Below, in pieces: positions 1 to 8,218 of a stretch of DNA of 64,000 bases; the first letter of the stretch is position 1; each line of letters begins with the position of its first letter. Under the pieces are notes generated by a model. That model was not told the origin of the DNA. It was given only the letters and a program-made list of their open reading frames with translations, and did not search any database. The stretch is from Obrimoposthia wandeli (taxonomy: Eukaryota). The stretch is taken from NCBI GenBank assembly GCA_977020255.1, contig CDROCS010004896.1, forward strand, positions 1 through 64,000, read 5' to 3'. The position numbers were made by a program, and so were the translations under genes.

Positions 1-897
1 GGGGTTACGTATTGTTGCAATGGCTGGCTGGAAAAAAGTGGTTGATGCCGTACATGCTAAAGGCGGCAAAATTGCGCCTCAGTTATGGCATGTAGGTTCA
101 GTGCGTAAAGAAGGCGCCGATCCAGATCCTTCTGTGCCGGGTTATAGCCCTTCTGGTTTATTTATGCCGGGTAAGAAAAACGGTATTGCGATGTCTCAGC
201 AAGATATCGATGACGTAGTTGAAGCGTTTGCACAAGCGGCAGCCGACGCAAAAGAAGTTGGCTTTGATGCCGTTGAGATTCATGGTGCGCACGGTTATTT
301 AATCGACCAGTTCTTCTGGGAAGGTACTAATACACGCGATGATAGCTATGGTGGTGACTTGGTTGCCCGTACTAAATTTGCCGTTGAATGCCCAGTTATT
401 TTGTGTTTCGTGTGCCGCTACTAATCATTTTCCGTTTTTCACAATGGAAGCAGCAAGATTATGATGCACGTTTAGTACAAACGCCTGAAGAGTTAAAAGC
501 CTTCTTAACGCCTCTAGTCGATGCCGGTGTCGATATTTTCCATTGCAGCACACGTCGCTATTGGGAAAAAGAATTTGAGAACGCTCCTGTTGATGGTGAT
601 TTAAACCTAGCAGGCTGGACTAAAAAGTTAACGGGCAAGCCTGTGATCACAGTGGGTAGCGTTGGTTTAAATACTAGCTTTGTAGGTGCTGAACACGGTA
701 TGGAAATGTCTGCTCAAGCGGGTATTGAAACCAGTTCTATTACTCAGCTTGCTGAACGTGTTGCAAAAAATGAATTTGATTTAGTCGCTGTGGGCCGTGC
801 TTTAATTCAAGACCCTGAGTGGGTAATTAAAGTACGTGAAAATCGCTTGGAAGAATTGCAGGATTATTCGAAAGAGAGTTTGATGCAGTTGGTTTAA
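1..897 (+). pseudogene. NADH:flavin oxidoreductase (Old Yellow Enzyme family); 5' end outside window; frame broken at 389-423
   Basis: ORF 20-424 has QLWHVG and EIHGAHGYLIDQF; ORF 388-897 continues with FRFSQWK, GKPVITVGSVG and DLVAVGRAL. A 35-nt segment joins the two halves out of frame. True pseudogene vs sequencing error is unresolved. Confidence 0.8.
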
Positions 898-924
898 TAC
901 ATCTGAATATTTAAGTCTCTCGTA

Positions 925-952
925 GCACTACAGGCAGAGATGCCAGTAGTGC
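925..952. repeat. hairpin GCACTACAGGCA-GAGA-TGCCAGTAGTGC (REP-like or terminator stem)
   Basis: 11/12-bp inverted repeat with a GNRA loop, 28 bp after the OYE stop; no U-tract. Confidence 0.4.
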
Positions 953-1062
953 ATGCCGATTAAAACCAAGACACTTAATATTTCATGCTTAGATGGATGG
1001 CAATGATAATAAATTTTCATTATGTGGCCAATCACACAAGCAGAGAACATTAAGTATTGTTC

Positions 1063-1157
1063 ACATAACTCTTAGCATTTACGACGGCTTTGTAGCGTGG
1101 TACGAACGGAAAAGAGAGCTCTTTTTGGCCGGAACGCATTTCAGCGTATTGTTAAAT
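1063..1157 (-). mobile_element. attC site (95 bp), L' box degenerate
   Basis: Minus strand ATTTAAC-AATAC-GCTGAAAT...TAAATGC-TAAGA-GTTATGT. R'' ATTTAAC is exactly complementary to this cassette's core GTTAAAT at 1823-1817. Confidence 0.8.
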
Positions 1158-1159
1158 CA

Positions 1160-1792
1160 CTACTCAATTATTTCTAATTTAAATTTTGAAATATCTGATG
1201 CATCATCATTTCCGTGAAAGTCTAGAAGTTCATCAGAGATTAATGAAGTATCTTGCATTTGTGTATACACCCCATACTCAGGTAGATAGTCCATAGAATC
1301 CGCCGTAGGAGTATCTTTATAGACATTAATATTAACCTGAGTTGTTAACGAAATAATTTTAAGATCATCATGCAAGCTTCTATCCACTATAAAAGTAAGA
1401 GTATTATCATCGACTTCATAATCTATAACCCCTTTTATATAAAGAGTATCTTCGTCTTCATACTGAAGTAATCTTGCTTCTAATTTTGAGAACTCGATAT
1501 CCCTCTCAACTTCACCTGCTTGCTTATCCTCACTTATTCTGAAGACAATATCTTTCTCCCCAATGATACTGTCACCGTTAATGTCAAAAGTTACTGACCA
1601 ATCATACTCTTTGCGTCCACTTTCAGTTTCTGAATGATCGATGGTAAGTACTTTTGGTATGTCTTTAACAAAAATTGATGCCCTTATTGTATTTTCGGAA
1701 AAAGAAGAACCTGTATCATTTTCTTTGTTACTCTCGCCATTACAAGCCATCAACAACATACAATTTATTGCCAACAAAATATTCTTATTCAT
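1160..1792 (-). CDS. cassette-encoded lipoprotein, 210 aa, unknown function
   Basis: Intact ORF; signal peptide with lipobox LMAC; stop 3 bp before attC R''. Confidence 0.8.
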   Translation of the reverse strand: MNKNILLAINCMLLMACNGESNKENDTGSSFSENTIRASIFVKDIPKVLTIDHSETESGRKEYDWSVTFDINGDSIIGEKDIVFRISEDKQAGEVERDIEFSKLEARLLQYEDEDTLYIKGVIDYEVDDNTLTFIVDRSLHDDLKIISLTTQVNINVYKDTPTADSMDYLPEYGVYTQMQDTSLISDELLDFHGNDDASDISKFKLEIIE

Positions 1793-1816
1793 ATGATTTC
1801 CTTATCTAATTTTAGG

Positions 1817-1884
1817 ATTTAACGTCCAGCAGCGGCGGCGAAGCCGTCCAGCCCGCAGGGCGATGCTGCCTTTGTTTGTTATGT
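1817..1884 (-). mobile_element. attC site (68 bp)
   Basis: ACATAAC-AAACA-AAGGCAGC...GCTGCT-GGAC-GTTAAAT; L'' AGGCAGC pairs with L' GCTGCT leaving one extrahelical G. Confidence 0.9.
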
Positions 1885-1912
1885 AGCTGTTACTAAATAT
1901 AAACTATGTTGG

Positions 1913-2344
1913 TTATTTATTTTTTGATTTAACCACTCGGGTTTTTAGTTTGTAGTTAGTAATCATCGAAATTGAGTCGGAGTCAGCATATATAATCCCA
2001 CTTGAGTAGTTTACATCCTCATCTGGATTTAAGTCCCAACTTCCTTGAGTGCATCCTACAAGCTTACCGTTTTTATCATGAAATGAAATTGAATATATTG
2101 CCTTTACTTTCTGATTTGATGTATTGTCAATTCTTGCATTTGCGTTAACAATTGTTTCACCAAAAAAGTCATCATCTTCCTGAATATTAATTACAAACCT
2201 TATCTTATCACCAACTCTTACCTTCACCTTTTTTTCATTTTCAAAAATAATAGATTTTTCCTGGTAGCTTTCCTCTAGAGCAGCGACTGAGATGCCTGGA
2301 ATCAACAGTAATGTAATAAAAAAATACGTAATACTTTTCTTCAT
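1913..2344 (-). CDS. cassette-encoded exported protein, 143 aa (possibly FxLYD-like beta-sandwich)
   Basis: Intact ORF with signal peptide. SISFHDKNGKLVG resembles the FxLYD motif (weak inference). Confidence 0.7.
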   Translation of the reverse strand: MKKSITYFFITLLLIPGISVAALEESYQEKSIIFENEKKVKVRVGDKIRFVINIQEDDDFFGETIVNANARIDNTSNQKVKAIYSISFHDKNGKLVGCTQGSWDLNPDEDVNYSSGIIYADSDSISMITNYKLKTRVVKSKNK

Positions 2345-2393
2345 AATAAGACCCTTTAATACTTAAATTTAGGATGATCGGTTGATACCAATA

Positions 2394-2469
2394 CATTAAC
2401 GCCTGCCAGCAAAGGCGAGTGAAACGAGTCCAGCCAGCTTGCTGGCAATTTTGGCTGGCTTTGTTATGT
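2394..2469 (-). mobile_element. attC site (76 bp)
   Basis: ACATAAC-AAAGC-CAGCCAAA...TTTGCTG-GCAGGC-GTTAATG; L boxes pair with one extrahelical C. Confidence 0.9.
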
Positions 2470-2843
2470 AGTTAGCTTCGAGAGTAATAACCCTTAAACC
2501 AAAGCAAGTCGCAGGAAGTGCAGTGATATAAAACAGGTTGTCCATCTACCCTTAAATTCAACTGGTTCTTCAATTAATTTCTTACAGTCTTTGCATTGAA
2601 AAATCATTATCAAGAAAAGAAACATGAGTTCGTATATGTTTTTCTATGTTTCTTTCCATCTCTTTGTTTCATTAAGAAAATAAAGAATAGAAGTAAACAA
2701 AAGCAAAATGATCGTTCCAAAGTACATTTTCATCAACTGTGAAGAGAACTACTGAAAATGATCCCATTATGATTAAAAAGTAACATCGTAACAAAACTTG
2801 TACTTGTCCCTTCTAATTGTGCATTTTTAACTTTAAGAGCCAT
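2470..2843 (-). pseudogene. frameshifted cassette ORF (starts MALKVKNAQLEG; later fragment contains CKDC)
   Basis: ATG ~13 nt after the core GTTATGT; frame stops after 36 codons while other frames carry coding-like fragments up to the attC. Confidence 0.5.
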
Positions 2844-2855
2844 TTAACCCTACTC

Positions 2856-2954
2856 ACATAACGCCTCACTAAGAGGCAAAAAATAGTTGGTTAAAATAAG
2901 CGACGCAGGAGCAAAAACCAACTGTTATTTGTCCTTTTAAGTGACTTGTTAGCA
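2856..2954 (-). mobile_element. attC site (99 bp)
   Basis: TGCTAAC-AAGTC-ACTTAAAAGG...CCTCTTAGT-GAGGC-GTTATGT with internal AGTTGGTT/AACCAACT pairing; R' GTTATGT is complementary to the next cassette's R'' ACATAAC. Confidence 0.9.
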
Positions 2955-2959
2955 TGCCC

Positions 2960-3593
2960 TTACAAATCCAACGTACTAAATTCATTATTGTTATTCATTA
3001 AATAGGTTATTGGAATACCATACTTGGTAGATATTTGACGAAAAACACTATCATATTTAAGGTCTCATTCCGCAAATTATTCGTGTTGGAACAGCGGAAA
3101 TATATTCATCTTTAGAAAACTCATTCTGGAATAGCCTATATTCATTTTCATACTTCCAGCAACTAGATTTACCATTTAAAATCCCAAGATCCTGTGGTTG
3201 TAGTCATCTAGTATCTGTTTTGTCTGTTCTATAGAAATTACGGTGGACAACCATACTGGATTTCCCTGATATCGAATTCTTCTGGAGATAAGTCATACTC
3301 AAAACACACGCCTGAATAGCCACCAGCATAATGTGCCCATAAAAGTTCATTTTTAAAACAACGGGTAAAGCTGATGGTTCTTTTTGAAGCAATTAGAAAA
3401 AAATAGTTCCTCTTTAATATCTAAAGAGTTTTTCACCCTAAAAGTTCTACTTTGATTCCGTGCTACTCCAACTGCCTTCAAGAGGGTCATTTAATGATTT
3501 ACAAGGAGGAAGGAATATACGTTGATTTACAATCATATCTAACGAGTGTAAAAAACCGTCACCCTCTAAAGATTTAAACTTATAAAGTTTCAT
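2960..3593 (-). pseudogene. DUF2971-type protein, broken by several frameshifts
   Basis: Stitched fragments: MKLYKFKSL...SLNDPLEG / ISFTRCFKNELLWAHYAGGYSGVCFEYD / KSSCWKYENEYR, matching the LYKY-NDPFE, LMWAHYA and KxxxWxYExExR motifs. Confidence 0.75.
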
Positions 3594-3624
3594 AGACTTC
3601 CCTGTGAATCCACCATGGCATGTT

Positions 3625-3716
3625 GTTTTTGTTGTGGGGCGGTGAAACGTAGCGAGGAACGAGTGAAGTTTAACCGTCCCAGCACCGTAGGTGCGAACAC
3701 CAACTCATTGTTAGCT
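3625..3716 (-). mobile_element. attC site with R' core missing
   Basis: AGCTAAC-AATGA-GTTGGTG...CACAAC (L boxes pair, extrahelical G), then AAAAAC-AACATG where GTTRRRY is expected. Confidence 0.75.
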
Positions 3717-4214
3717 TTAATGCCACTTAATATTTTTAATTGCATTGGAAATCACTTTTGAAGTTTCTTTATGTCTCAATTCACCTTCGAGTGTAACCAA
3801 AAGAGCAACCTTTAGACCGACAGCACCATACAAATTATAAAACTGTGAAGCATCTTGCTTCAGTCTCAATATGCCAAATAGGGCTTCCTGATAATGTCTT
3901 TAGCTAAAGGCAAAGTAAATCTTTAAATCTGGCTCTCTACTAGCTTGAATCATCGTTGCGGAGATATTCTCTCCAAATTCATCACGAATATGTTGCAGAT
4001 CGGCTTCGCTGCCTTTACCAGTTATTCTATAAGATGAAACTATAAGGTATTCGTTATTCGGACCAATTAATTTTGCTTGGCTAGATAATTCCTCAACCTT
4101 CCAAGTAGATGGAAGCTCAAGTAAAAAGCTATCGGTTTCTACTCTGACAGGCTCTGCAATAGCACCTTGGCTGAAATTCCAAATGGTTAAAGCTACCAGT
4201 GATATTAATTTCAT
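3717..4214 (-). pseudogene. exported cassette protein (possibly PsbP/DcrB-like), frameshifted near 3900 and 3850
   Basis: Signal peptide, FLLELPSTWKVE. Downstream frames continue (KTLSGSPIWHIETEA / YNLYGAVGLKVALLVTLEG...IKNIKWH) to a TAA abutting attC R''. Confidence 0.65.
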
Positions 4215-4225
4215 AAGCTTTCAGC

Positions 4226-4297
4226 AGTTAACGCTTTTAGCACAGGCGTTGTTTTTGCGCGTCCAGCCGAAGGCGATTGTGCCTAAACTTGTTATGT
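4226..4297 (-). mobile_element. attC site (72 bp)
   Basis: ACATAAC-AAGTT-TAGGCACA...TGTGCTA-AAAGC-GTTAACT; extrahelical G in L''. Confidence 0.92.
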
Positions 4298-4696
4298 GTG
4301 ACTTCCAAACCGAAGCTCTCCAATCTAATATATATGTACTGTACTAAACCACCTGTCAATTCAAAAAGAATCTCCAGTTTTTGGAGGAAATAATATTCCC
4401 ATGAATTCTTTCTTTGAACCATCTGCTCCTCATAATGGCTGATGGTGCTGACTCTACGATCAACCCACTAATTTTATTTGCACCAATAAATTTAATGTGA
4501 AGTTTTACGATAGCAAGCATATTCGCTTCATTAGGCTTTGTGTAATGTTCAGACTCGTACAAATACTTTGCACAGTACAAGTAGTCATACTAAAGGTATA
4601 GAATACCACTGGACGTTTATCCAGATTTTCATGAACGAAGGAATCATTTAGGTCTATACTCCTTCGGAATAATTTAATTTGAGTTAAACTATTCAT
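4294..4696 (-). pseudogene. first cassette ORF, split over three frames, unknown function
   Basis: ATG 4 nt after GTTATAT (4707-4701); track ORFs 4505-4696, 4356-4580 and 4237-4422 tile the interval in different frames. Confidence 0.55.
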
Positions 4697-4700
4697 TTAC

Positions 4701-4860
4701 ATATAACATTTTAATCATGCGCATGCGCGTTTGCACGGAAGGCTCTTTTAGAAACTTCACGGCAACTGATTGATTTAACTCGGTAATTTTCAAAGTCCAT
4801 TTCCAAGCTCCAGAAATACGCGCATGCGCGTTTGCACAAATAACGAGGGTCTCGTTATGT
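4701..4860 (-). other. array-leading recombination site: attI-like or atypical long attC
   Basis: Ends in ...ATGATTAAAAT-GTTATAT, which supplies the first cassette's core. Two exact 18-bp direct repeats GCGCATGCGCGTTTGCAC (4719-4736, 4820-4837), an 8-bp hairpin (4840-4858), and ACATAAC at 4860-4854. Confidence 0.6.
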
Positions 4861-5280
4861 CAGCGCATATATTGGTAACCCATTAATTTTGCATGACTTT
4901 TAAAATTTCTGCCAGTGCAAACGCGCAAGTTTAAGTTTATTTCCGTGCAAATGAGCACGAACATACTCTTTTCAATAAAATCATCTGTATAGATACACAT
5001 ACTTTAAAAATGCACGTTGAACCTAAATGCAAACCCCTATTAACTATAATAAGAGCGGTACATTATTAACCGCTGTATGCACTCTAAAGGCCGATTGATT
5101 TTATTGATCAGCTCTACAATAGACTTCTAGTGCACTTAACAGATGCTCTAACGATGATCTAAACATTCTTGATACACAGTCCATTAGCGGGTACTGGATA
5201 ATTATCGCTACTGGTTAGTAGCGCTGCTATTACATCATCTCCATACCCCCTCATATTTCAGCGGGGGATATTGGTATGCT

Positions 5281-6561
5281 CTATTTTCGCTTACACATAG
5301 GCGTGCCTTCACGCTCTGCTTTAATCGCTTTTTCTTCATCGATCACGTTCTGAGGGAACTGACGCATAAAACAACAACAGACATTATCGTTGATCATTGT
5401 GCGCGGTCCAAATGGATGTGCGATGTGTTTATACGGCGCATGATGATGGCCGTGTTCTTCAGCATGCGAATGTGCCTTCTCTTTAGAATCTTCATGAGTA
5501 TGGCTATGCGAATGTCCATGACTATCTGAATGAGTGTGGCTGTCTGAGTGACTATGCGACTCACCATGAGTGTGTTCATGCTCACCTTCATGAGAATGCT
5601 GATGCCCTGCTTCGCTGGTTTCGTCAGGCTGAAATTCTGCATGGTGATGATGCACATCCACTTCGCCCGCGGCCAAGCGACGCTGGAAGTCTTCCATTAA
5701 ACCCATTTCATTACCTTGTCTTGGCTGAGCAATTTCTGCGATGCGCGTAATGAAGGTATTTAATACATGAGATTGATCACGTAAATAATCGGCTTTGATA
5801 AATTCTACGTCAGGGTTTTCGGCTGCGACTTTATCCACATACGCATAGATGCGATCGATTAAGCGGCCACCAAATAAGAAGTAAGGCGCTACTACTATTT
5901 TCTTGAAGCCTAGCTTCAAGGCCATTTCTAAACCACGACCAACGCTTGGGTAAGTCACACCAGAATAAACGGTTTCTGACCAACCAAAGCCTAGGTTTTC
6001 ACTGATAATTCGGGTTAGCTTAGCGGCATCTGCGTTCGCGTCTACCACTGAAGTTCCACGGCCGACAACCACCAGCATGGTATCGTATAACTCACCCGCT
6101 GCAGGGACACCATCATTTTCATCAGAAGAATAACCTAACGATTCAGAAACTCTATGCTGAAAAGCACTAATCATTTCATCGTGTAAGCCCAGTTCTTTAC
6201 CATAGGCGATGGTCAGTTCTGGATACGTTTCTTTGTAGGTTGTTAATACCGATGGGATATCATTTTTTGCATGGGTCGCGGCAAATAACATACCTGGCAC
6301 TGCAAAGATATTTTTCACGCCTTGCTCGCGTAAACGATCAAGTGCCATGTGAATATTCGGTGAAGAATACTCTAGGAATCCGTATTCAATTTTTAGCGTA
6401 GGAAAACGCGCACGTAAACCTTTTGCTAATAAGCTGAATTCTTCTTCAGCAATTTTTGCGCGACTGCCGTGGCCACAGATAATAATACCGCTATTCTCTG
6501 GCAATACGCTTGGCAGATTATTCACGACGTCATCTAAGCTATTCATTATTTCATGGGTCAT
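5281..6561 (-). CDS. cbiX: sirohydrochlorin cobaltochelatase CbiX, long form with His-rich and Cys-containing tail
   Basis: ICGHGSR and AATHAKNDIP in the first domain, VVGRGTS in the second, His-rich C-terminal region; located in a cob operon. Confidence 0.88.
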   Translation of the reverse strand: MTHEIMNSLDDVVNNLPSVLPENSGIIICGHGSRAKIAEEEFSLLAKGLRARFPTLKIEYGFLEYSSPNIHMALDRLREQGVKNIFAVPGMLFAATHAKNDIPSVLTTYKETYPELTIAYGKELGLHDEMISAFQHRVSESLGYSSDENDGVPAAGELYDTMLVVVGRGTSVVDANADAAKLTRIISENLGFGWSETVYSGVTYPSVGRGLEMALKLGFKKIVVAPYFLFGGRLIDRIYAYVDKVAAENPDVEFIKADYLRDQSHVLNTFITRIAEIAQPRQGNEMGLMEDFQRRLAAGEVDVHHHHAEFQPDETSEAGHQHSHEGEHEHTHGESHSHSDSHTHSDSHGHSHSHTHEDSKEKAHSHAEEHGHHHAPYKHIAHPFGPRTMINDNVCCCFMRQFPQNVIDEEKAIKAEREGTPMCKRK

Positions 6562-6613
6562 TTTAAAATGTTTCCATAATTGAATTTGTATTTTTTATAG
6601 TCATCAATACTAA

Positions 6614-7429
6614 TTATATTTTTAACGTAGGATGCGCTTGTGCATCTTCAACGCTTCTTGGTTTTTTCGGTTTTACTTTTGGACGAAATACATGCGCTTG
6701 CTTTTCATCGTATAAATACGAATCATCAAAGTCGCCGTCGCCTAAAACATGGCCAACTAAGATAAGGGATGTACGAGTGAATTTTTTCTCACGTACTTTG
6801 GCAACGATATCTTTTAACGTGCCAATCACTTTATCTTGATCTTCCCACGAGGTGCGATAGCACACTGCGATTGGGCAGTCTTCGCCATAGTGTGGAATAA
6901 GCTCTTCAACAATTTTATGAATACGGGTTACGCCAAGGTGAATTGCTAGCGTCGCACCCGTCGCGGCTAATGCTGGTAAACGTTCACGTTCTGGGAACGG
7001 AGTTTTACCTTCATAGCGGGTCATGATAATGGTTTGAGAAACACCCGATAGGGTTAGCTCTTTACCCAACCAAGCAGCCGAGGCTGATGTTGCTGTAACA
7101 CCAGGAATGATTTCGAAATCGATACCGAGTTCATTCAAGCGACGAATCTGTTCACCGATAGCGCCGTATAAAGAAGGATCGCCACTGTGAACGCGAGCAA
7201 CATCTTTGCCTTCTTTATGAGCGATTTTCATGTGCTCAATAATTTCATCGAGATCGATAGAAGCGGTATCAATAATTTGCTCGGCGCTATCTTCTACATC
7301 GGCCAATACGGCACGAGGCACTAATGAGCCTGCATATAAAATAATTGGGCAAGCATTAATCAAACGCTGCGCTTTGATGGTGATTAATTCTGGATCGCCA
7401 GGACCTGCACCAATAAAATAAACTTTCAT
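6614..7429 (-). CDS. cobM: (cobalt-)precorrin-4 C11-methyltransferase CobM/CbiF
   Basis: VYFIGAGPGDPELIT, YAGSLV, RVHSGDPSLYGAIGEQ. Confidence 0.93.
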   Translation of the reverse strand: MKVYFIGAGPGDPELITIKAQRLINACPIILYAGSLVPRAVLADVEDSAEQIIDTASIDLDEIIEHMKIAHKEGKDVARVHSGDPSLYGAIGEQIRRLNELGIDFEIIPGVTATSASAAWLGKELTLSGVSQTIIMTRYEGKTPFPERERLPALAATGATLAIHLGVTRIHKIVEELIPHYGEDCPIAVCYRTSWEDQDKVIGTLKDIVAKVREKKFTRTSLILVGHVLGDGDFDDSYLYDEKQAHVFRPKVKPKKPRSVEDAQAHPTLKI

Positions 7430-7441
7430 GACATTAGCCCT

Positions 7442-8218
7442 TTATAATTTTTTGCTGTAGCCGCGTGGTGTGTAAACCCATTCTTTATCGCCATTTTCTA
7501 TATGGCGCGTCTCGCTATTACCGACACTGACCAGTGTGAACATATCCACGTCGGCGGCATCGAGCTTATCGAGCGTTGTAATGGTGATGCTTTCATCTTC
7601 ACGGGTTAATTGGCGGCCTAATAATACTGGGGTATTGGCTGGGCGATATTGCAATAAAATATCGCGTGCAGTATTAATCTGCCAATCACGTTTTTTCGAG
7701 CGAGGGTTATAAAACGACACTACGAAGTCGCCTTCACCACAGCTGTGCAAACGTTTCTCAATGGTCTGCCAAGGCGTTAATAGATCGGATAACGAGATAG
7801 TGCAGAAGTCATGACCTAACATCGCACCAATGCGTGCTGAGCCAGCTTGCATGGCAGAAATACCCGGTACGACTTCGATATCAACGTCTAACCATTCAGG
7901 GTGATTCTCTTTACCTTGCAACTGCATGTCGAGTAATTCAAAGACTAAAGTGGCCATGGCGTAGATGCCAATGTCGCCACTGGAAAGTAGTGCTGTGGTT
8001 TTGCCACTCGCCGCAAGGTCTAACGCTAAGCGTGCGCGGCCAATTTCTTCACCTAGTGGTAAGTCGTGGTGCGTTTTACCGTCACAAACGCTGCCTAATA
8101 GATCTAGGTAAAGTCCATAAGCAACAAGGTCGCTACATTCGCCGATGGCTTTCACCGATCGTGGTGCGATTAAATCGGCATTACCCGGGCCTGTGCTTAT
8201 CAAATACAGTTTGGTCAT
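7442..8218 (-). CDS. cobJ: (cobalt-)precorrin-3B C17-methyltransferase CobJ/CbiH
   Basis: SSGDIGIYAMA, GHDFCTISLSDLLTPW, FYNPRS, TPRGY. Confidence 0.93.
   Translation of the reverse strand: MTKLYLISTGPGNADLIAPRSVKAIGECSDLVAYGLYLDLLGSVCDGKTHHDLPLGEEIGRARLALDLAASGKTTALLSSGDIGIYAMATLVFELLDMQLQGKENHPEWLDVDIEVVPGISAMQAGSARIGAMLGHDFCTISLSDLLTPWQTIEKRLHSCGEGDFVVSFYNPRSKKRDWQINTARDILLQYRPANTPVLLGRQLTREDESITITTLDKLDAADVDMFTLVSVGNSETRHIENGDKEWVYTPRGYSKKL

What the first reader, a model, noticed from the sequence alone, without database searches (positions are those of the whole stretch)
4701..4960. Unusual array-leading site: direct repeats that can also pair as inverted repeats
The first cassette's core GTTATAT (4707-4701) is not preceded by a normal attC stem. 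Instead there are two exact 18-bp direct repeats GCGCATGCGCGTTTGCAC, 101 bp apart. Their GCGCATGCGC core is self-complementary, so in single-stranded DNA the two copies can pair with each other. An 8-bp hairpin ATAACGAG-GGT-CTCGTTAT (4840-4858) follows, and an R''-like ACATAAC at 4860-4854 gives a 160-bp unit with attC-like termini but no pairing L boxes. Beyond it lies a degenerate inverted partial copy: 4895-4907 matches 4785-4797 (12/13), 4915-4927 matches the repeat (13/13), 4941-4951 matches 4730-4740 (11/11). The end ...ATTAAAAT-GTT resembles, from memory, the class 2 attI end TAATAAAAT-GTT. It could be an attI with accessory binding sites, an atypical attC class, or the target of a different recombinase.
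Basis: partly seen in the sequence, partly recalled or inferred. Interest (0 to 1): 0.72.

Follow-up and report, generated by a model that had tools for sequence, protein, structure and literature searches.

The report
Integrase-less Shewanella/class-2-type integron attI site
The repeats are the conserved landing site (attI) where an integron inserts gene cassettes, of the same family as the attI of Shewanella and of the clinical class 2 integron, but here and in most related copies the integrase gene that should sit next to it is missing.

Summary
The region is not an odd attC. It is an attI site of the Shewanella/class 2 (attI2) family.

- **Distribution.** The paired motif AACGCGCATGC, 101-108 bp apart, occurs in at least 120 loci of marine Gammaproteobacteria.
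- **Boundary.** Conservation stops exactly at GTT, 24-26 nt after the proximal copy, and all 103 modules measured for this carry a different sequence after it.
- **Integrase.** A divergent intI lies 116-207 bp upstream in 17 of 83 assessable copies. Four more have intI remnants and 62, like the window, have none.
- **Relatives.** Tn7 attI2 is a degenerate copy of the same about 190-bp layout. The proximal 28-mer matches the published Shewanella-type attI at 25 of 28 positions.
- **Window.** It keeps the whole platform up to a LexA-box remnant near 5000, but no trace of intI.
- **Turnover.** Metagenome contigs identical to the module continue after GTT into other cassettes.

What may be new is the layout: palindromic sites about ten helical turns apart with a mid-way IHF-like site. 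Also possibly new is how common integrase-less copies are, up to 8 intact per genome. One paper already noted a Shewanella-type attI heading an integrase-less array. What binds the repeats is not shown.

The parts
4705..4707 (-). Crossover triplet GTT (AAC on the + strand). The inferred recombination point lies between 4707 and 4706.
   Evidence: Information content across 120 aligned modules falls from 1.0-1.6 bits to below 0.3 bits right after GTTA, with a residual R-R-Y bias. Metagenome contigs diverge at 4702-4705.
4701..4718 (-). Simple site ATGATTAAAATG|TTATAT, made of an L-box-like and an R-box-like part.
   Evidence: Conserved as ACTAATAAAATGTTA or GATTAAAATGTTA in relatives and in Tn7 attI2. 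Matches the minimal attI2 consensus AATAAAATGTTRRRY given in PMC12901181.
4719..4736 (-). Proximal 18-mer (site D). It reads GTGCAAACGCGCATGCGC toward the cassettes and abuts the simple site.
   Evidence: With the simple site it matches the published Shewanella-type attI AAACGCGCATGCGCACTAATAAAATGTT (quoted in PMC9892861) at 25 of 28 positions.
4763..4776 (-). IHF-like consensus AATCAATCAGTTG (WATCAANNNNTTR), mid-way between the two 18-mers.
   Evidence: A strict consensus sits at a fixed position 57-69 nt from the distal site in 9 of 46 dereplicated modules. Shuffles give 0.3 on average and at most 2. This is a motif match only.
4795..4804 (-). Conserved block GGAAATGGAC. Function unknown.
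   Evidence: The core AAATGGA is invariant in the nine-sequence alignment A1.
4818..4837 (.). Distal 18-mer (site C), containing the perfect palindrome ACGCGCATGCGCGT at 4818-4831.
   Evidence: D4, I21. In many relatives the palindrome extends to AAACGCGCATGCGCGTTT.
4840..4858 (.). Inverted repeat ATAACGAG-GGT-CTCGTTAT, possibly a third, variant binding site.
   Evidence: Nearly invariant in all Oleispira-type relatives, including copies beside intI (A1).
4876..4889 (-). Second IHF-like element AAATTAATGGGTTA, one mismatch to the consensus in the window.
   Evidence: Relatives read AATCAATACATTA or AATCAGTGCATTA at the aligned position (A1).
4912..4929 (+). Site B', an inverted copy of the 13-mer GTGCAAACGCGCA.
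   Evidence: I14. Conserved as TGCGCGTTTGCACTGG in A1. Equivalent to the half-site about 75 nt upstream of the distal site in Shewanella-type modules.
4941..4958 (+). Site A', a degenerate inverted copy (TTCCGTGCAAATGAGCAC).
   Evidence: I4. Aligned to a weakly conserved TGC..TTTGCAC block in A1.
4985..5000 (.). LexA-box-like remnant CTGTATAGATACACAT, one mismatch to CTGT-N8-ACAG. It is what remains of the intI promoter region.
   Evidence: It aligns with CTGGTTTTTTATACAG and CTGTATATCCATCCAG just before the intI start in the intI-linked relatives L138 and L107 (A1). Homology to relatives ends near 5007.
4232..4706 (-). First cassette: ORF 4505-4696 (63 aa, no Pfam family) and its attC at 4226-4297.
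   Evidence: In array orientation the attC reads ACATAACAAG...GCGTTAACT.
1063..4706 (-). Cassette array read on the minus strand. attC sites lie at about 4226-4297, 3627-3713, 2856-2954, 2394-2469 and 1817-1884.
   Evidence: Searches show a shared ..TAACAAR....GCGTTA.. signature in one orientation. Cassette ORFs have no Pfam family. The 3627-3713 element is multi-copy in metagenomes.
5001..5280 (.). Non-coding stretch where intI would be expected. No intI remnant is present.
   Evidence: blastx against IntI proteins gave nothing better than E = 0.4. No ORF of 50 aa or more lies there.
5281..6561 (-). Flanking CbiX-type cobaltochelatase gene. It converges on the module and is unrelated to the integron.
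   Evidence: Pfam CbiX, E = 6e-46.

Best explanation
Window 4701 to about 5007 is the attI platform of a chromosomal integron of the Shewanella/class 2 (attI2) family. It sits in an Oleispira-like gammaproteobacterium, and the integrase gene has been lost from the locus.

Cassettes are inserted at G|TT (4707/4706) and read on the minus strand. The two 18-mers, their inverted copies (4912-4929 and 4941-4958) and the 4840-4858 inverted repeat are the family's conserved accessory elements upstream of the simple site ATGATTAAAATG|TTA.

Shown:
- homology to attI sites that lie beside intI, and to Tn7 attI2;
- an exact crossover boundary;
- different cassettes behind the same site;
- absence of intI at this locus.

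Inferred:
- the repeats are binding sites for the integrase, or for an integron-specific partner;
- the two main sites, about ten helical turns apart with an IHF-like site mid-way, are brought together by a DNA bend to help attI x attC recombination and/or to control the cassette and intI promoters;
- the site is served in trans by an integrase encoded elsewhere or supplied transiently.
For: - **Distribution.** At least 120 loci carry AACGCGCATGC twice, 101-108 bp apart (mode 104-105). Nearly all are marine Gammaproteobacteria.
- **Boundary.** Conservation ends at GTTA, followed by a GTT-A-R-R-Y bias. All 103 modules measured for this carry a different 30-mer after GTT.
- **intI linkage.** 17 modules have a near-full-length intI on the opposite strand, 116-207 nt upstream. 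Four have truncated intI. intI is the only recurrent upstream gene family. In Oleispira NORP219, an intI scoring 390 bits against TIGR02249 (cut-off 265) lies 240 bp from a module.
- **attI2 homology.** Tn7/R721 attI2 aligns along about 190 bp, with degenerate versions of both sites about 105 bp apart and the same end ACTAATAAAATG|TTAACC before dfrA1.
- **Literature.** The Shewanella-type attI AAACGCGCATGCGCACTAATAAAATGTT is quoted in PMC9892861.
- **Window versus relatives.** The window aligns with Oleispira modules from 4701 to 4926-5007 at 78-83% identity, including the LexA-box region next to intI in L138.
- **Turnover.** A glacier-metagenome contig identical to 4705-4852 continues after GTT with GGACATGCC.... 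Other contigs break at 4702-4705.
- **Arrays downstream.** An attC signature occurs at 0.74 per kb downstream on the array strand, against 0.14-0.15 per kb elsewhere. 36 of 45 integrase-less copies have at least one within 4 kb.
- **Motif is module-specific.** The 11-mer occurs almost only inside such modules in five genomes. The reversed control gave 0-3 hits per strand.
Against: - No intI lies beside the window's site, and no intI closer than 43-44% identity to the Oleispira enzyme is full-length anywhere in the mixed assembly. Present-day activity here is therefore unproven.
- No sigma-70 consensus promoter pointing into the cassettes was found in the module.
- The palindromic 18-mer does not resemble the GTTA-type integrase sites of attI1, so a separate DNA-binding protein may be the binder.
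- Decayed and collapsed copies exist, so not all integrase-less sites are maintained.
- The search demanded two exact 11-mers.
Confidence: 0.88

Rival explanations
1. The module is mainly a transcriptional control region. The palindromic 18-mers would be operators for a dimeric regulator that controls a cassette promoter (and formerly the intI promoter). Only the last 18 bp or so would act in recombination.
For: - The distal site is a perfect palindrome, typical of dimeric helix-turn-helix operators.
- In class 2 integrons the cassette promoters Pc2A and Pc2B lie inside attI2 (PMC5559693).
- The motif is unlike the GTTA-type repeats of attI1.
- Modules persist in Shewanella cutis, whose draft genome shows 8 intact copies and no intI.
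Against: - No regulator gene is conserved near the modules.
- The motif is virtually absent outside the modules in five genomes, so no wider regulon exists.
- No consensus promoter was found in the window's module.
- Integron loci with other integrase lineages carry other repeat motifs in the same two-site layout. That fits co-evolution with the integrase.
Confidence: 0.25
2. The region is an atypical attC or an ORF-less cassette. It would recombine as folded single-stranded DNA, with the repeated copies pairing with each other.
For: Both strands fold more stably than shuffles, z = -3.5 and -4.7. Site B' pairs with the proximal 18-mer in the predicted fold.
Against: - The conserved unit is 255-305 bp, far longer than the 68-103 nt of the attC sites delimited in these arrays.
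- Its primary sequence is conserved across families, whereas the attC sites of these arrays share only short end signatures.
- It has a cassette on one side only. On the other side lies intI or unrelated chromosomal DNA.
- There is no break in conservation at the proposed R''-like ACATAAC at 4854-4860.
- It lacks the TAACAAR...GCGTTA ends of the local attC sites.
Confidence: 0.03
3. The repeats are transposase-binding sites at one end of a Tn7-, Mu- or Tn402-like transposon or a miniature element, which would explain the many copies per genome.
For: - There are several copies per genome, up to 8 intact in one draft genome.
- Subterminal direct and inverted repeats of 13-18 bp resemble complex transposon ends.
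- The genomic contexts upstream are varied.
Against: - Only one boundary is sharp, and it is a GTT followed by cassette-type sequence and attC sites.
- The upstream boundary varies from -17 to -265 between copies.
- The window's contig has no second copy of the motif that could be the other end.
- No transposase family recurs nearby. intI does.
Confidence: 0.03

Closest known systems
Shewanella-type attI (S. oneidensis MR-1 integron; Drouin et al. 2002, as quoted in PMC9892861)
   Same: The proximal motif plus simple site AAACGCGCATGCGC-ACTAATAAAATG|TT matches the window at 25 of 28 positions. The position at the head of the array and the GTT crossover are the same. PMC9892861 also notes this attI once at the head of an array without integrase.
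   Different: - The window's copy belongs to an Oleispira-type sub-family: GATTAAAAT instead of CTAATAAAAT, a conserved ATAACGAG-N3-CTCGTTAT inverted repeat, and GTGCAAAC flanks.
- It has no intI beside it.
- The papers I could read describe only the proximal 28 bp, not the distal copy or the inverted copies.
attI2 of class 2 integrons (Tn7)
   Same: It aligns over about 190 bp. Shared elements are TGAGATAAT, a distal ..ACG-GCATGC-ACGATTT.. site, a central TTAAC..GT..GC block, and a proximal AAAACGAGCATGCTT site next to ACTAATAAAATG|TTA. The two sites are about 105 bp apart.
   Different: In Tn7 both sites are degenerate: AAACGAGCATGCTT, and GACGGCATGCAC with a 1-nt deletion. intI2 (with its internal stop) is present. 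PMC12901181 (2026) states that structural elements and binding sites of attI2 have not been defined.
attI1 of class 1 integrons
   Same: The logic is the same: a simple site with L and R boxes around G|TT, plus upstream repeated elements (DR1 and DR2) that act as extra integrase-binding sites (as summarised in PMC12901181).
   Different: attI1 is about 65 bp. Its direct repeats lie within about 55 bp of the crossover (PMC12901181) and, from my recollection of the attI1 sequence, carry a GTTA-like motif. Here the repeats are a GC-rich palindrome, one copy lies about 104 bp further upstream, and the conserved platform spans 250-300 bp.
CALIN (cluster of attC sites lacking an integron integrase; Cury et al. 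2016)
   Same: The window's array has no integrase within the locus.
   Different: CALINs are defined without reference to attI. This one, like 62 of 83 assessable relatives, still carries a complete attI platform at its head.

Membership tests
Integron attI site, Shewanella/attI2 type | Lies at the junction between the platform and the first cassette, with a G|TT crossover followed by cassette-derived TTRRRY | tested here: met
   Conservation in 120 aligned modules ends at GTTA, followed by an R-R-Y bias. All 103 modules measured for this carry a different sequence after GTT. Metagenome contigs break at 4702-4705.
Integron attI site, Shewanella/attI2 type | Sequence homology to an attI with demonstrated activity (S. 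oneidensis attI; Tn7 attI2) | tested here: met
   25 of 28 positions match the published Shewanella-type attI. Alignment A2 with Tn7 attI2 shows shared blocks over about 190 bp.
Integron attI site, Shewanella/attI2 type | Adjacent, divergently transcribed intI | tested here: not met
   The window has no intI or remnant. Homologs have one in 17 of 83 assessable loci and remnants in 4. The site belongs to the attI family, but the locus is not a complete integron.
Integron attI site, Shewanella/attI2 type | Recombines with attC sites when the cognate integrase is present | not testable with these tools
   Only indirect evidence: identical or near-identical modules joined to different cassettes in natural samples.
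Integron attI site, Shewanella/attI2 type | Contains or adjoins the cassette promoter Pc | tested here: inconclusive
   The consensus scan found no sigma-70-like site on the cassette strand in 4400-5400. In class 2 integrons the promoters lie in attI2 (PMC5559693).
attC site (59-base element) | A short imperfect palindrome R''-L''...L'-R' at the 3' end of a cassette, conserved in structure rather than in sequence | tested here: not met
   The unit is 255-305 bp, against 68-103 nt for the attC sites delimited here. Its sequence is conserved across families. It is bounded by a cassette on one side only. It lacks the local attC end signature.
Complex transposon end (Tn7, Mu or Tn402 type) | A matching inverted end elsewhere in the element, plus a linked transposase | tested here: not met
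   There is no further copy of the 18-mer on the window's contig. No transposase family recurs upstream of the modules. Target duplications were not examined.

The most novel reading that the evidence does not exclude
Integrase-less attI2-type platforms are not just debris. They would be maintained 'landing pads', several per genome, that a single integrase encoded elsewhere or arriving transiently loads with cassettes. Their function would depend on a conserved assembly: palindromic sites about ten helical turns apart, bent together at a mid-way IHF-like site. That would give attI2-type sites an arm-site-like architecture not described for integrons. It would also mean many arrays classed as lacking an integrase are active, attI-headed arrays.
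Probability: 0.3. Interest if true: 0.65.

Novelty: new member of a known kind. Interest (0 to 1): 0.42.

Why it matters
A 2026 paper (PMC12901181) states that the functional elements of attI2, the site of the clinically important class 2 integrons, are still undefined. Environmental relatives such as this one keep those elements in undecayed form: two to four copies of one motif, fixed spacing, an IHF-like site and a LexA box. They therefore give a direct map for footprinting and deletion experiments.

Integrase-less copies outnumber integrase-linked ones about three to one in this sample. Each has its own cassettes at the exact crossover. This bears on how integrase-less arrays arise, and on whether integrases act in trans on several chromosomal sites.

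One such integrase-less site heads the trimethoprim-resistance cassette dfrA1 on a conjugative plasmid.

Tried and rejected
- **Rfam scan of 1-8000.** Nothing relevant.
- **blastn of the window's module against plasmids.** No match, because it is too divergent. The link to attI2 came only through the Proteus locus L127 and R721.
- **Two home-made attC detectors** (arm alignment, then DNA folding). Both failed on known attC sites and were dropped.
- **RNAalifold on nine attC sites.** No consensus structure, so no covariance model was built. A simple end-signature count was used instead.
- **The repeat finder for attC families in two integrase-less arrays.** None found.
- **Integrase tree.** The backbone is unresolved. 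IntI2 falls in a polytomy with the module-linked integrases, so I make no clade claim.
- **Shared sequence beyond intI in Shewanella HN-41 copies**. The neighbouring genes are ordinary: a metallophosphoesterase and an acyltransferase. This was not pursued as a mobile-element end.
- **Drouin et al. 2002.** Not available to read. Its attI is cited second-hand.
- **RNA evidence.** No sequencing run listed as holding this stretch is on record as RNA, so transcription from the module was not examined.
- **Which assembly contigs belong to the window's organism.** Not resolved. Whether that organism has an integrase elsewhere remains unknown.

Full report
**Observation.**
- the exact 18-mers at 4719-4736 and 4820-4837;
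- the 8-bp-stem inverted repeat at 4840-4858;
- the inverted 13-mer at 4915-4927;
- the partial copy from 4941;
- the inverted match between 4785-4797 and 4895-4907;
- GTTATAT on the minus strand at 4707-4701.

To the left lies a cassette array read on the minus strand. Its ORFs are on the minus strand and have no Pfam family. Its attC sites share a TAACAAR...GCGTTA signature in one orientation. To the right there are about 320 non-coding bases and then a convergent CbiX-type chelatase gene. No ORF of integrase size is present, and no blastx trace of intI.

**The assembly.**
The window is one bacterial contig (C4896) in a 1.35-Gb, 6912-contig mixed assembly. A cobalamin-pathway protein from the window is 85% identical to one in an Oleispira MAG, so the host is an Oleispira-like member of the Oceanospirillaceae.

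The 18-mer, with up to two mismatches, recurs in the assembly only in two homologous modules, on C1089 and C2735. A fourth, more diverged module on C2866 lies beside a frameshifted intI fragment. In C1089 the module is followed, after GTTAGCT, by an evident cassette array on the same strand.

**Distribution.**
About six are chance hits in unrelated phyla. The rest are Shewanella, Vibrionaceae, Oceanospirillales, Halomonadaceae, Cellvibrionaceae, Pseudoalteromonas and relatives. The start-to-start spacing is 101-108 bp with a mode of 104-105, which is about ten helical turns.

**The boundary.**
Anchored on the proximal copy, information content stays at 1.0-1.6 bits through ..GCACTAATAAAATGTTA. 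It collapses to below 0.3 bits at the next base. The next three positions show an R-R-Y bias, that is GTTRRRY. All 103 modules measured for this are followed by a different 30-mer. This is the signature expected of an attI x attC junction.

**Link to intI and to known attI sites.**
- tblastn with integron integrases found a near-full intI on the opposite strand, starting 116-207 nt upstream of the distal copy, in 17 modules. Four more have truncated intI. 62 have none within at least 1250 nt. 26 could not be judged.
- intI is the only gene family that recurs upstream.
- The Oleispira NORP219 genome has an intI well above the TIGR02249 cut-off, 240 bp from a module.
- A Proteus locus with a perfect module in front of dfrA1 led to plasmid R721, which carries the Tn7 array dfrA1-sat2-aadA1. 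Its attI2 ends ACAAAACGAGCATGCTTACTAATAAAATG|TTAACC. It has a degenerate second site, GACGGCATGCACGATTTG, about 105 bp upstream. It aligns block by block with the Shewanella and Oleispira modules (A2).
- PMC9892861 quotes the 'Shewanella-type attI site' AAACGCGCATGCGCACTAATAAAATGTT of Drouin et al. 2002. It also notes this site at the head of both a complete integron and an integrase-less array. The window matches it at 25 of 28 positions.

The site is therefore a member of a known attI family.

**Anatomy of the window's platform.**
Alignment A1 compares it with eight Oleispira-type relatives, two of them beside intI. In array orientation the conserved order is:
1. LexA-box region (window 4985-5000, one mismatch);
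2. A' (4941-4958);
3. B' (4912-4929);
4. an IHF-like element (4876-4889);
5. the ATAACGAG-N3-CTCGTTAT repeat (4840-4858);
6. the distal palindrome (4818-4837);
7. the AAATGGA block;
8. a second IHF-like element (4763-4776);
9. the proximal copy (4719-4736);
10. the simple site (4701-4718).

Homology to relatives stops near 5007, roughly 50-60 bp short of where intI would begin. The whole attI and most of the intI promoter region therefore survive, but the gene is gone.

**What the repeats may do.**
- The 11-mer core is almost confined to these modules in five genomes. Reversed-pattern controls gave 0-3 hits per strand. A genome-wide regulon is therefore unlikely.
- A strict IHF consensus sits at a fixed mid-way position in 9 of 46 dereplicated modules, against 0.3 expected. 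The Shewanella sub-family carries one on the other strand.
- Two integrons of other integrase lineages in the same assembly have the same end (..AATAAAA[TC]TG|TTA) but other repeat motifs. One has them 111 bp apart.

These points fit integron-specific accessory sites that co-vary with the integrase and are juxtaposed by a bend. No binding has been shown, and a dedicated regulator remains possible. PMC12901181 states that attI2 elements are undefined. PMC5559693 places the cassette promoters inside attI2. The consensus scan found none in the window.

**Integrase-less copies.**

| Genome | Modules | intI found |
|---|---|---|
| Thaumasiovibrio occultus (complete) | 5 intact, 1 mutated | 1 |
| Shewanella insulae | 4-5 | 1 |
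| Oleispira NORP219 | 4 | 2 (one partial) |
| Shewanella cutis (draft) | 8 intact, 3 decayed | none detected |

- Homology between copies in one genome always reaches the crossover, at +131 to +135. On the other side it ends anywhere from -17 to -265.
- Decayed forms include single-site modules collapsed by deletion between the two direct repeats.
- An attC end-signature is five times denser downstream on the array strand than elsewhere. It is present in 36 of 45 integrase-less copies.

**Natural variation at this site.**
Contigs from four public runs were laid on 3600-5400.
- Many contigs cover the module and break at 4702-4705.
- One glacier-metagenome contig is identical to 4705-4852 and continues after GTT with a different sequence starting GGAC.
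- Contigs from three studies join the module at 4703-4704 directly to the attC-like element at 3713, so they lack cassettes 1 and 2. These joints have short flanks and come from metagenomes, so they may belong to related organisms.
- The integrase-less right flank (4868-5083) is also seen in the glacier run.

All runs were contigs, so nothing can be said about transcription.

**Rejected readings.**
- **Atypical attC.** Ruled out by size, sequence conservation, one-sided cassette context and continuous conservation across the proposed internal boundary.
- **Transposon end.** Ruled out by the single sharp boundary, the absence of a second end on the contig and the absence of a transposase.
- **Single-strand folds.** The favourable folds follow from the inverted copies of one motif and do not discriminate.

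**Verdict.**
The feature is real and strongly conserved, and its kind is known. It is a new member (an Oleispira-type sub-family, without integrase) of the Shewanella/class 2 attI family. The comparative anatomy of the platform and the abundance of integrase-less copies add moderate value and are testable.

**Caveats.**
- The survey required two exact 11-mers.
- It sampled one genome per species.
- The attC count is a crude signature.
- The integrase tree was unresolved.

Noticed in passing
window 3627-3713: This attC-like element is present on many contigs at very high summed depth in four metagenome runs, with breaks at both ends. Relatives continue ...AAAGC-GTTATGT where the window reads AAAAACAACATG, so the window's copy seems to lack its R' GTT.
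   Followed up: partly
L155 (G000:C2866:24200-25700): A fourth, more diverged module of the same family (proximal AAATGCGCATGCGC, end AGTATTAAACAG|TTATGTG). It lies beside a frameshifted N-terminal half of an intI that is 62% and 55% identical to the Oleispira enzyme.
   Followed up: partly
L004 (G000:C666) and L003 (G000:C2866:95436-99398): Integrons of other integrase lineages end in the same ..AATAAAA[TC]TG|TTA but carry other upstream repeats. L004 has GATACACG[A/C]GA twice, 111 bp apart. L003 has GGCGGAACAGTTCC / GGAACTGTTCCGCC, and its intI has an in-frame TAG.
   Followed up: no
L127 (Proteus hauseri) and L141 (Moellerella plasmid NZ_CP129023, 4001-4501): A perfect Shewanella-type module heads the trimethoprim-resistance cassette dfrA1. 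It lies next to umuC on a conjugative MOBH plasmid, with no intI detected in the Proteus locus L127 and none annotated in the plasmid stretch L141.
   Followed up: partly
G007 (Shewanella cutis PS-2), e.g. C11:719740-719855 and C47:174448-174562: Eight intact and three decayed modules in one draft genome, with no integron integrase detected at E <= 1e-30.
   Followed up: partly
L143 (S. cutis), L147 (S. insulae): Single-site modules in which the distal left flank is fused to the proximal right flank. This is as expected from deletion by recombination between the two direct repeats.
   Followed up: no
L045 3805-4848 (Thaumasiovibrio occultus chr 2): A 347-aa ORF on the opposite strand interrupts an integrase-less array just after the second cassette. 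From its position it looks like an insertion sequence of the kind that targets attC sites, but I did not check its family.
   Followed up: no
window 4701-4736: From memory, the E. coli dif site (GGTGCGCATAA-TGTATA-TTATGTTAAAT) resembles the attI end (ATGCGCA-CTAAT/GATT-AAAATGTTA), with a shorter central part. This is a lead on the Xer ancestry of integron sites, not a test.
   Followed up: no
window 20-897: At the far end of the array, a gene that looks like a flavin oxidoreductase is split into two overlapping ORFs (20-424 and 388-897). This may be a frameshift.
   Followed up: no
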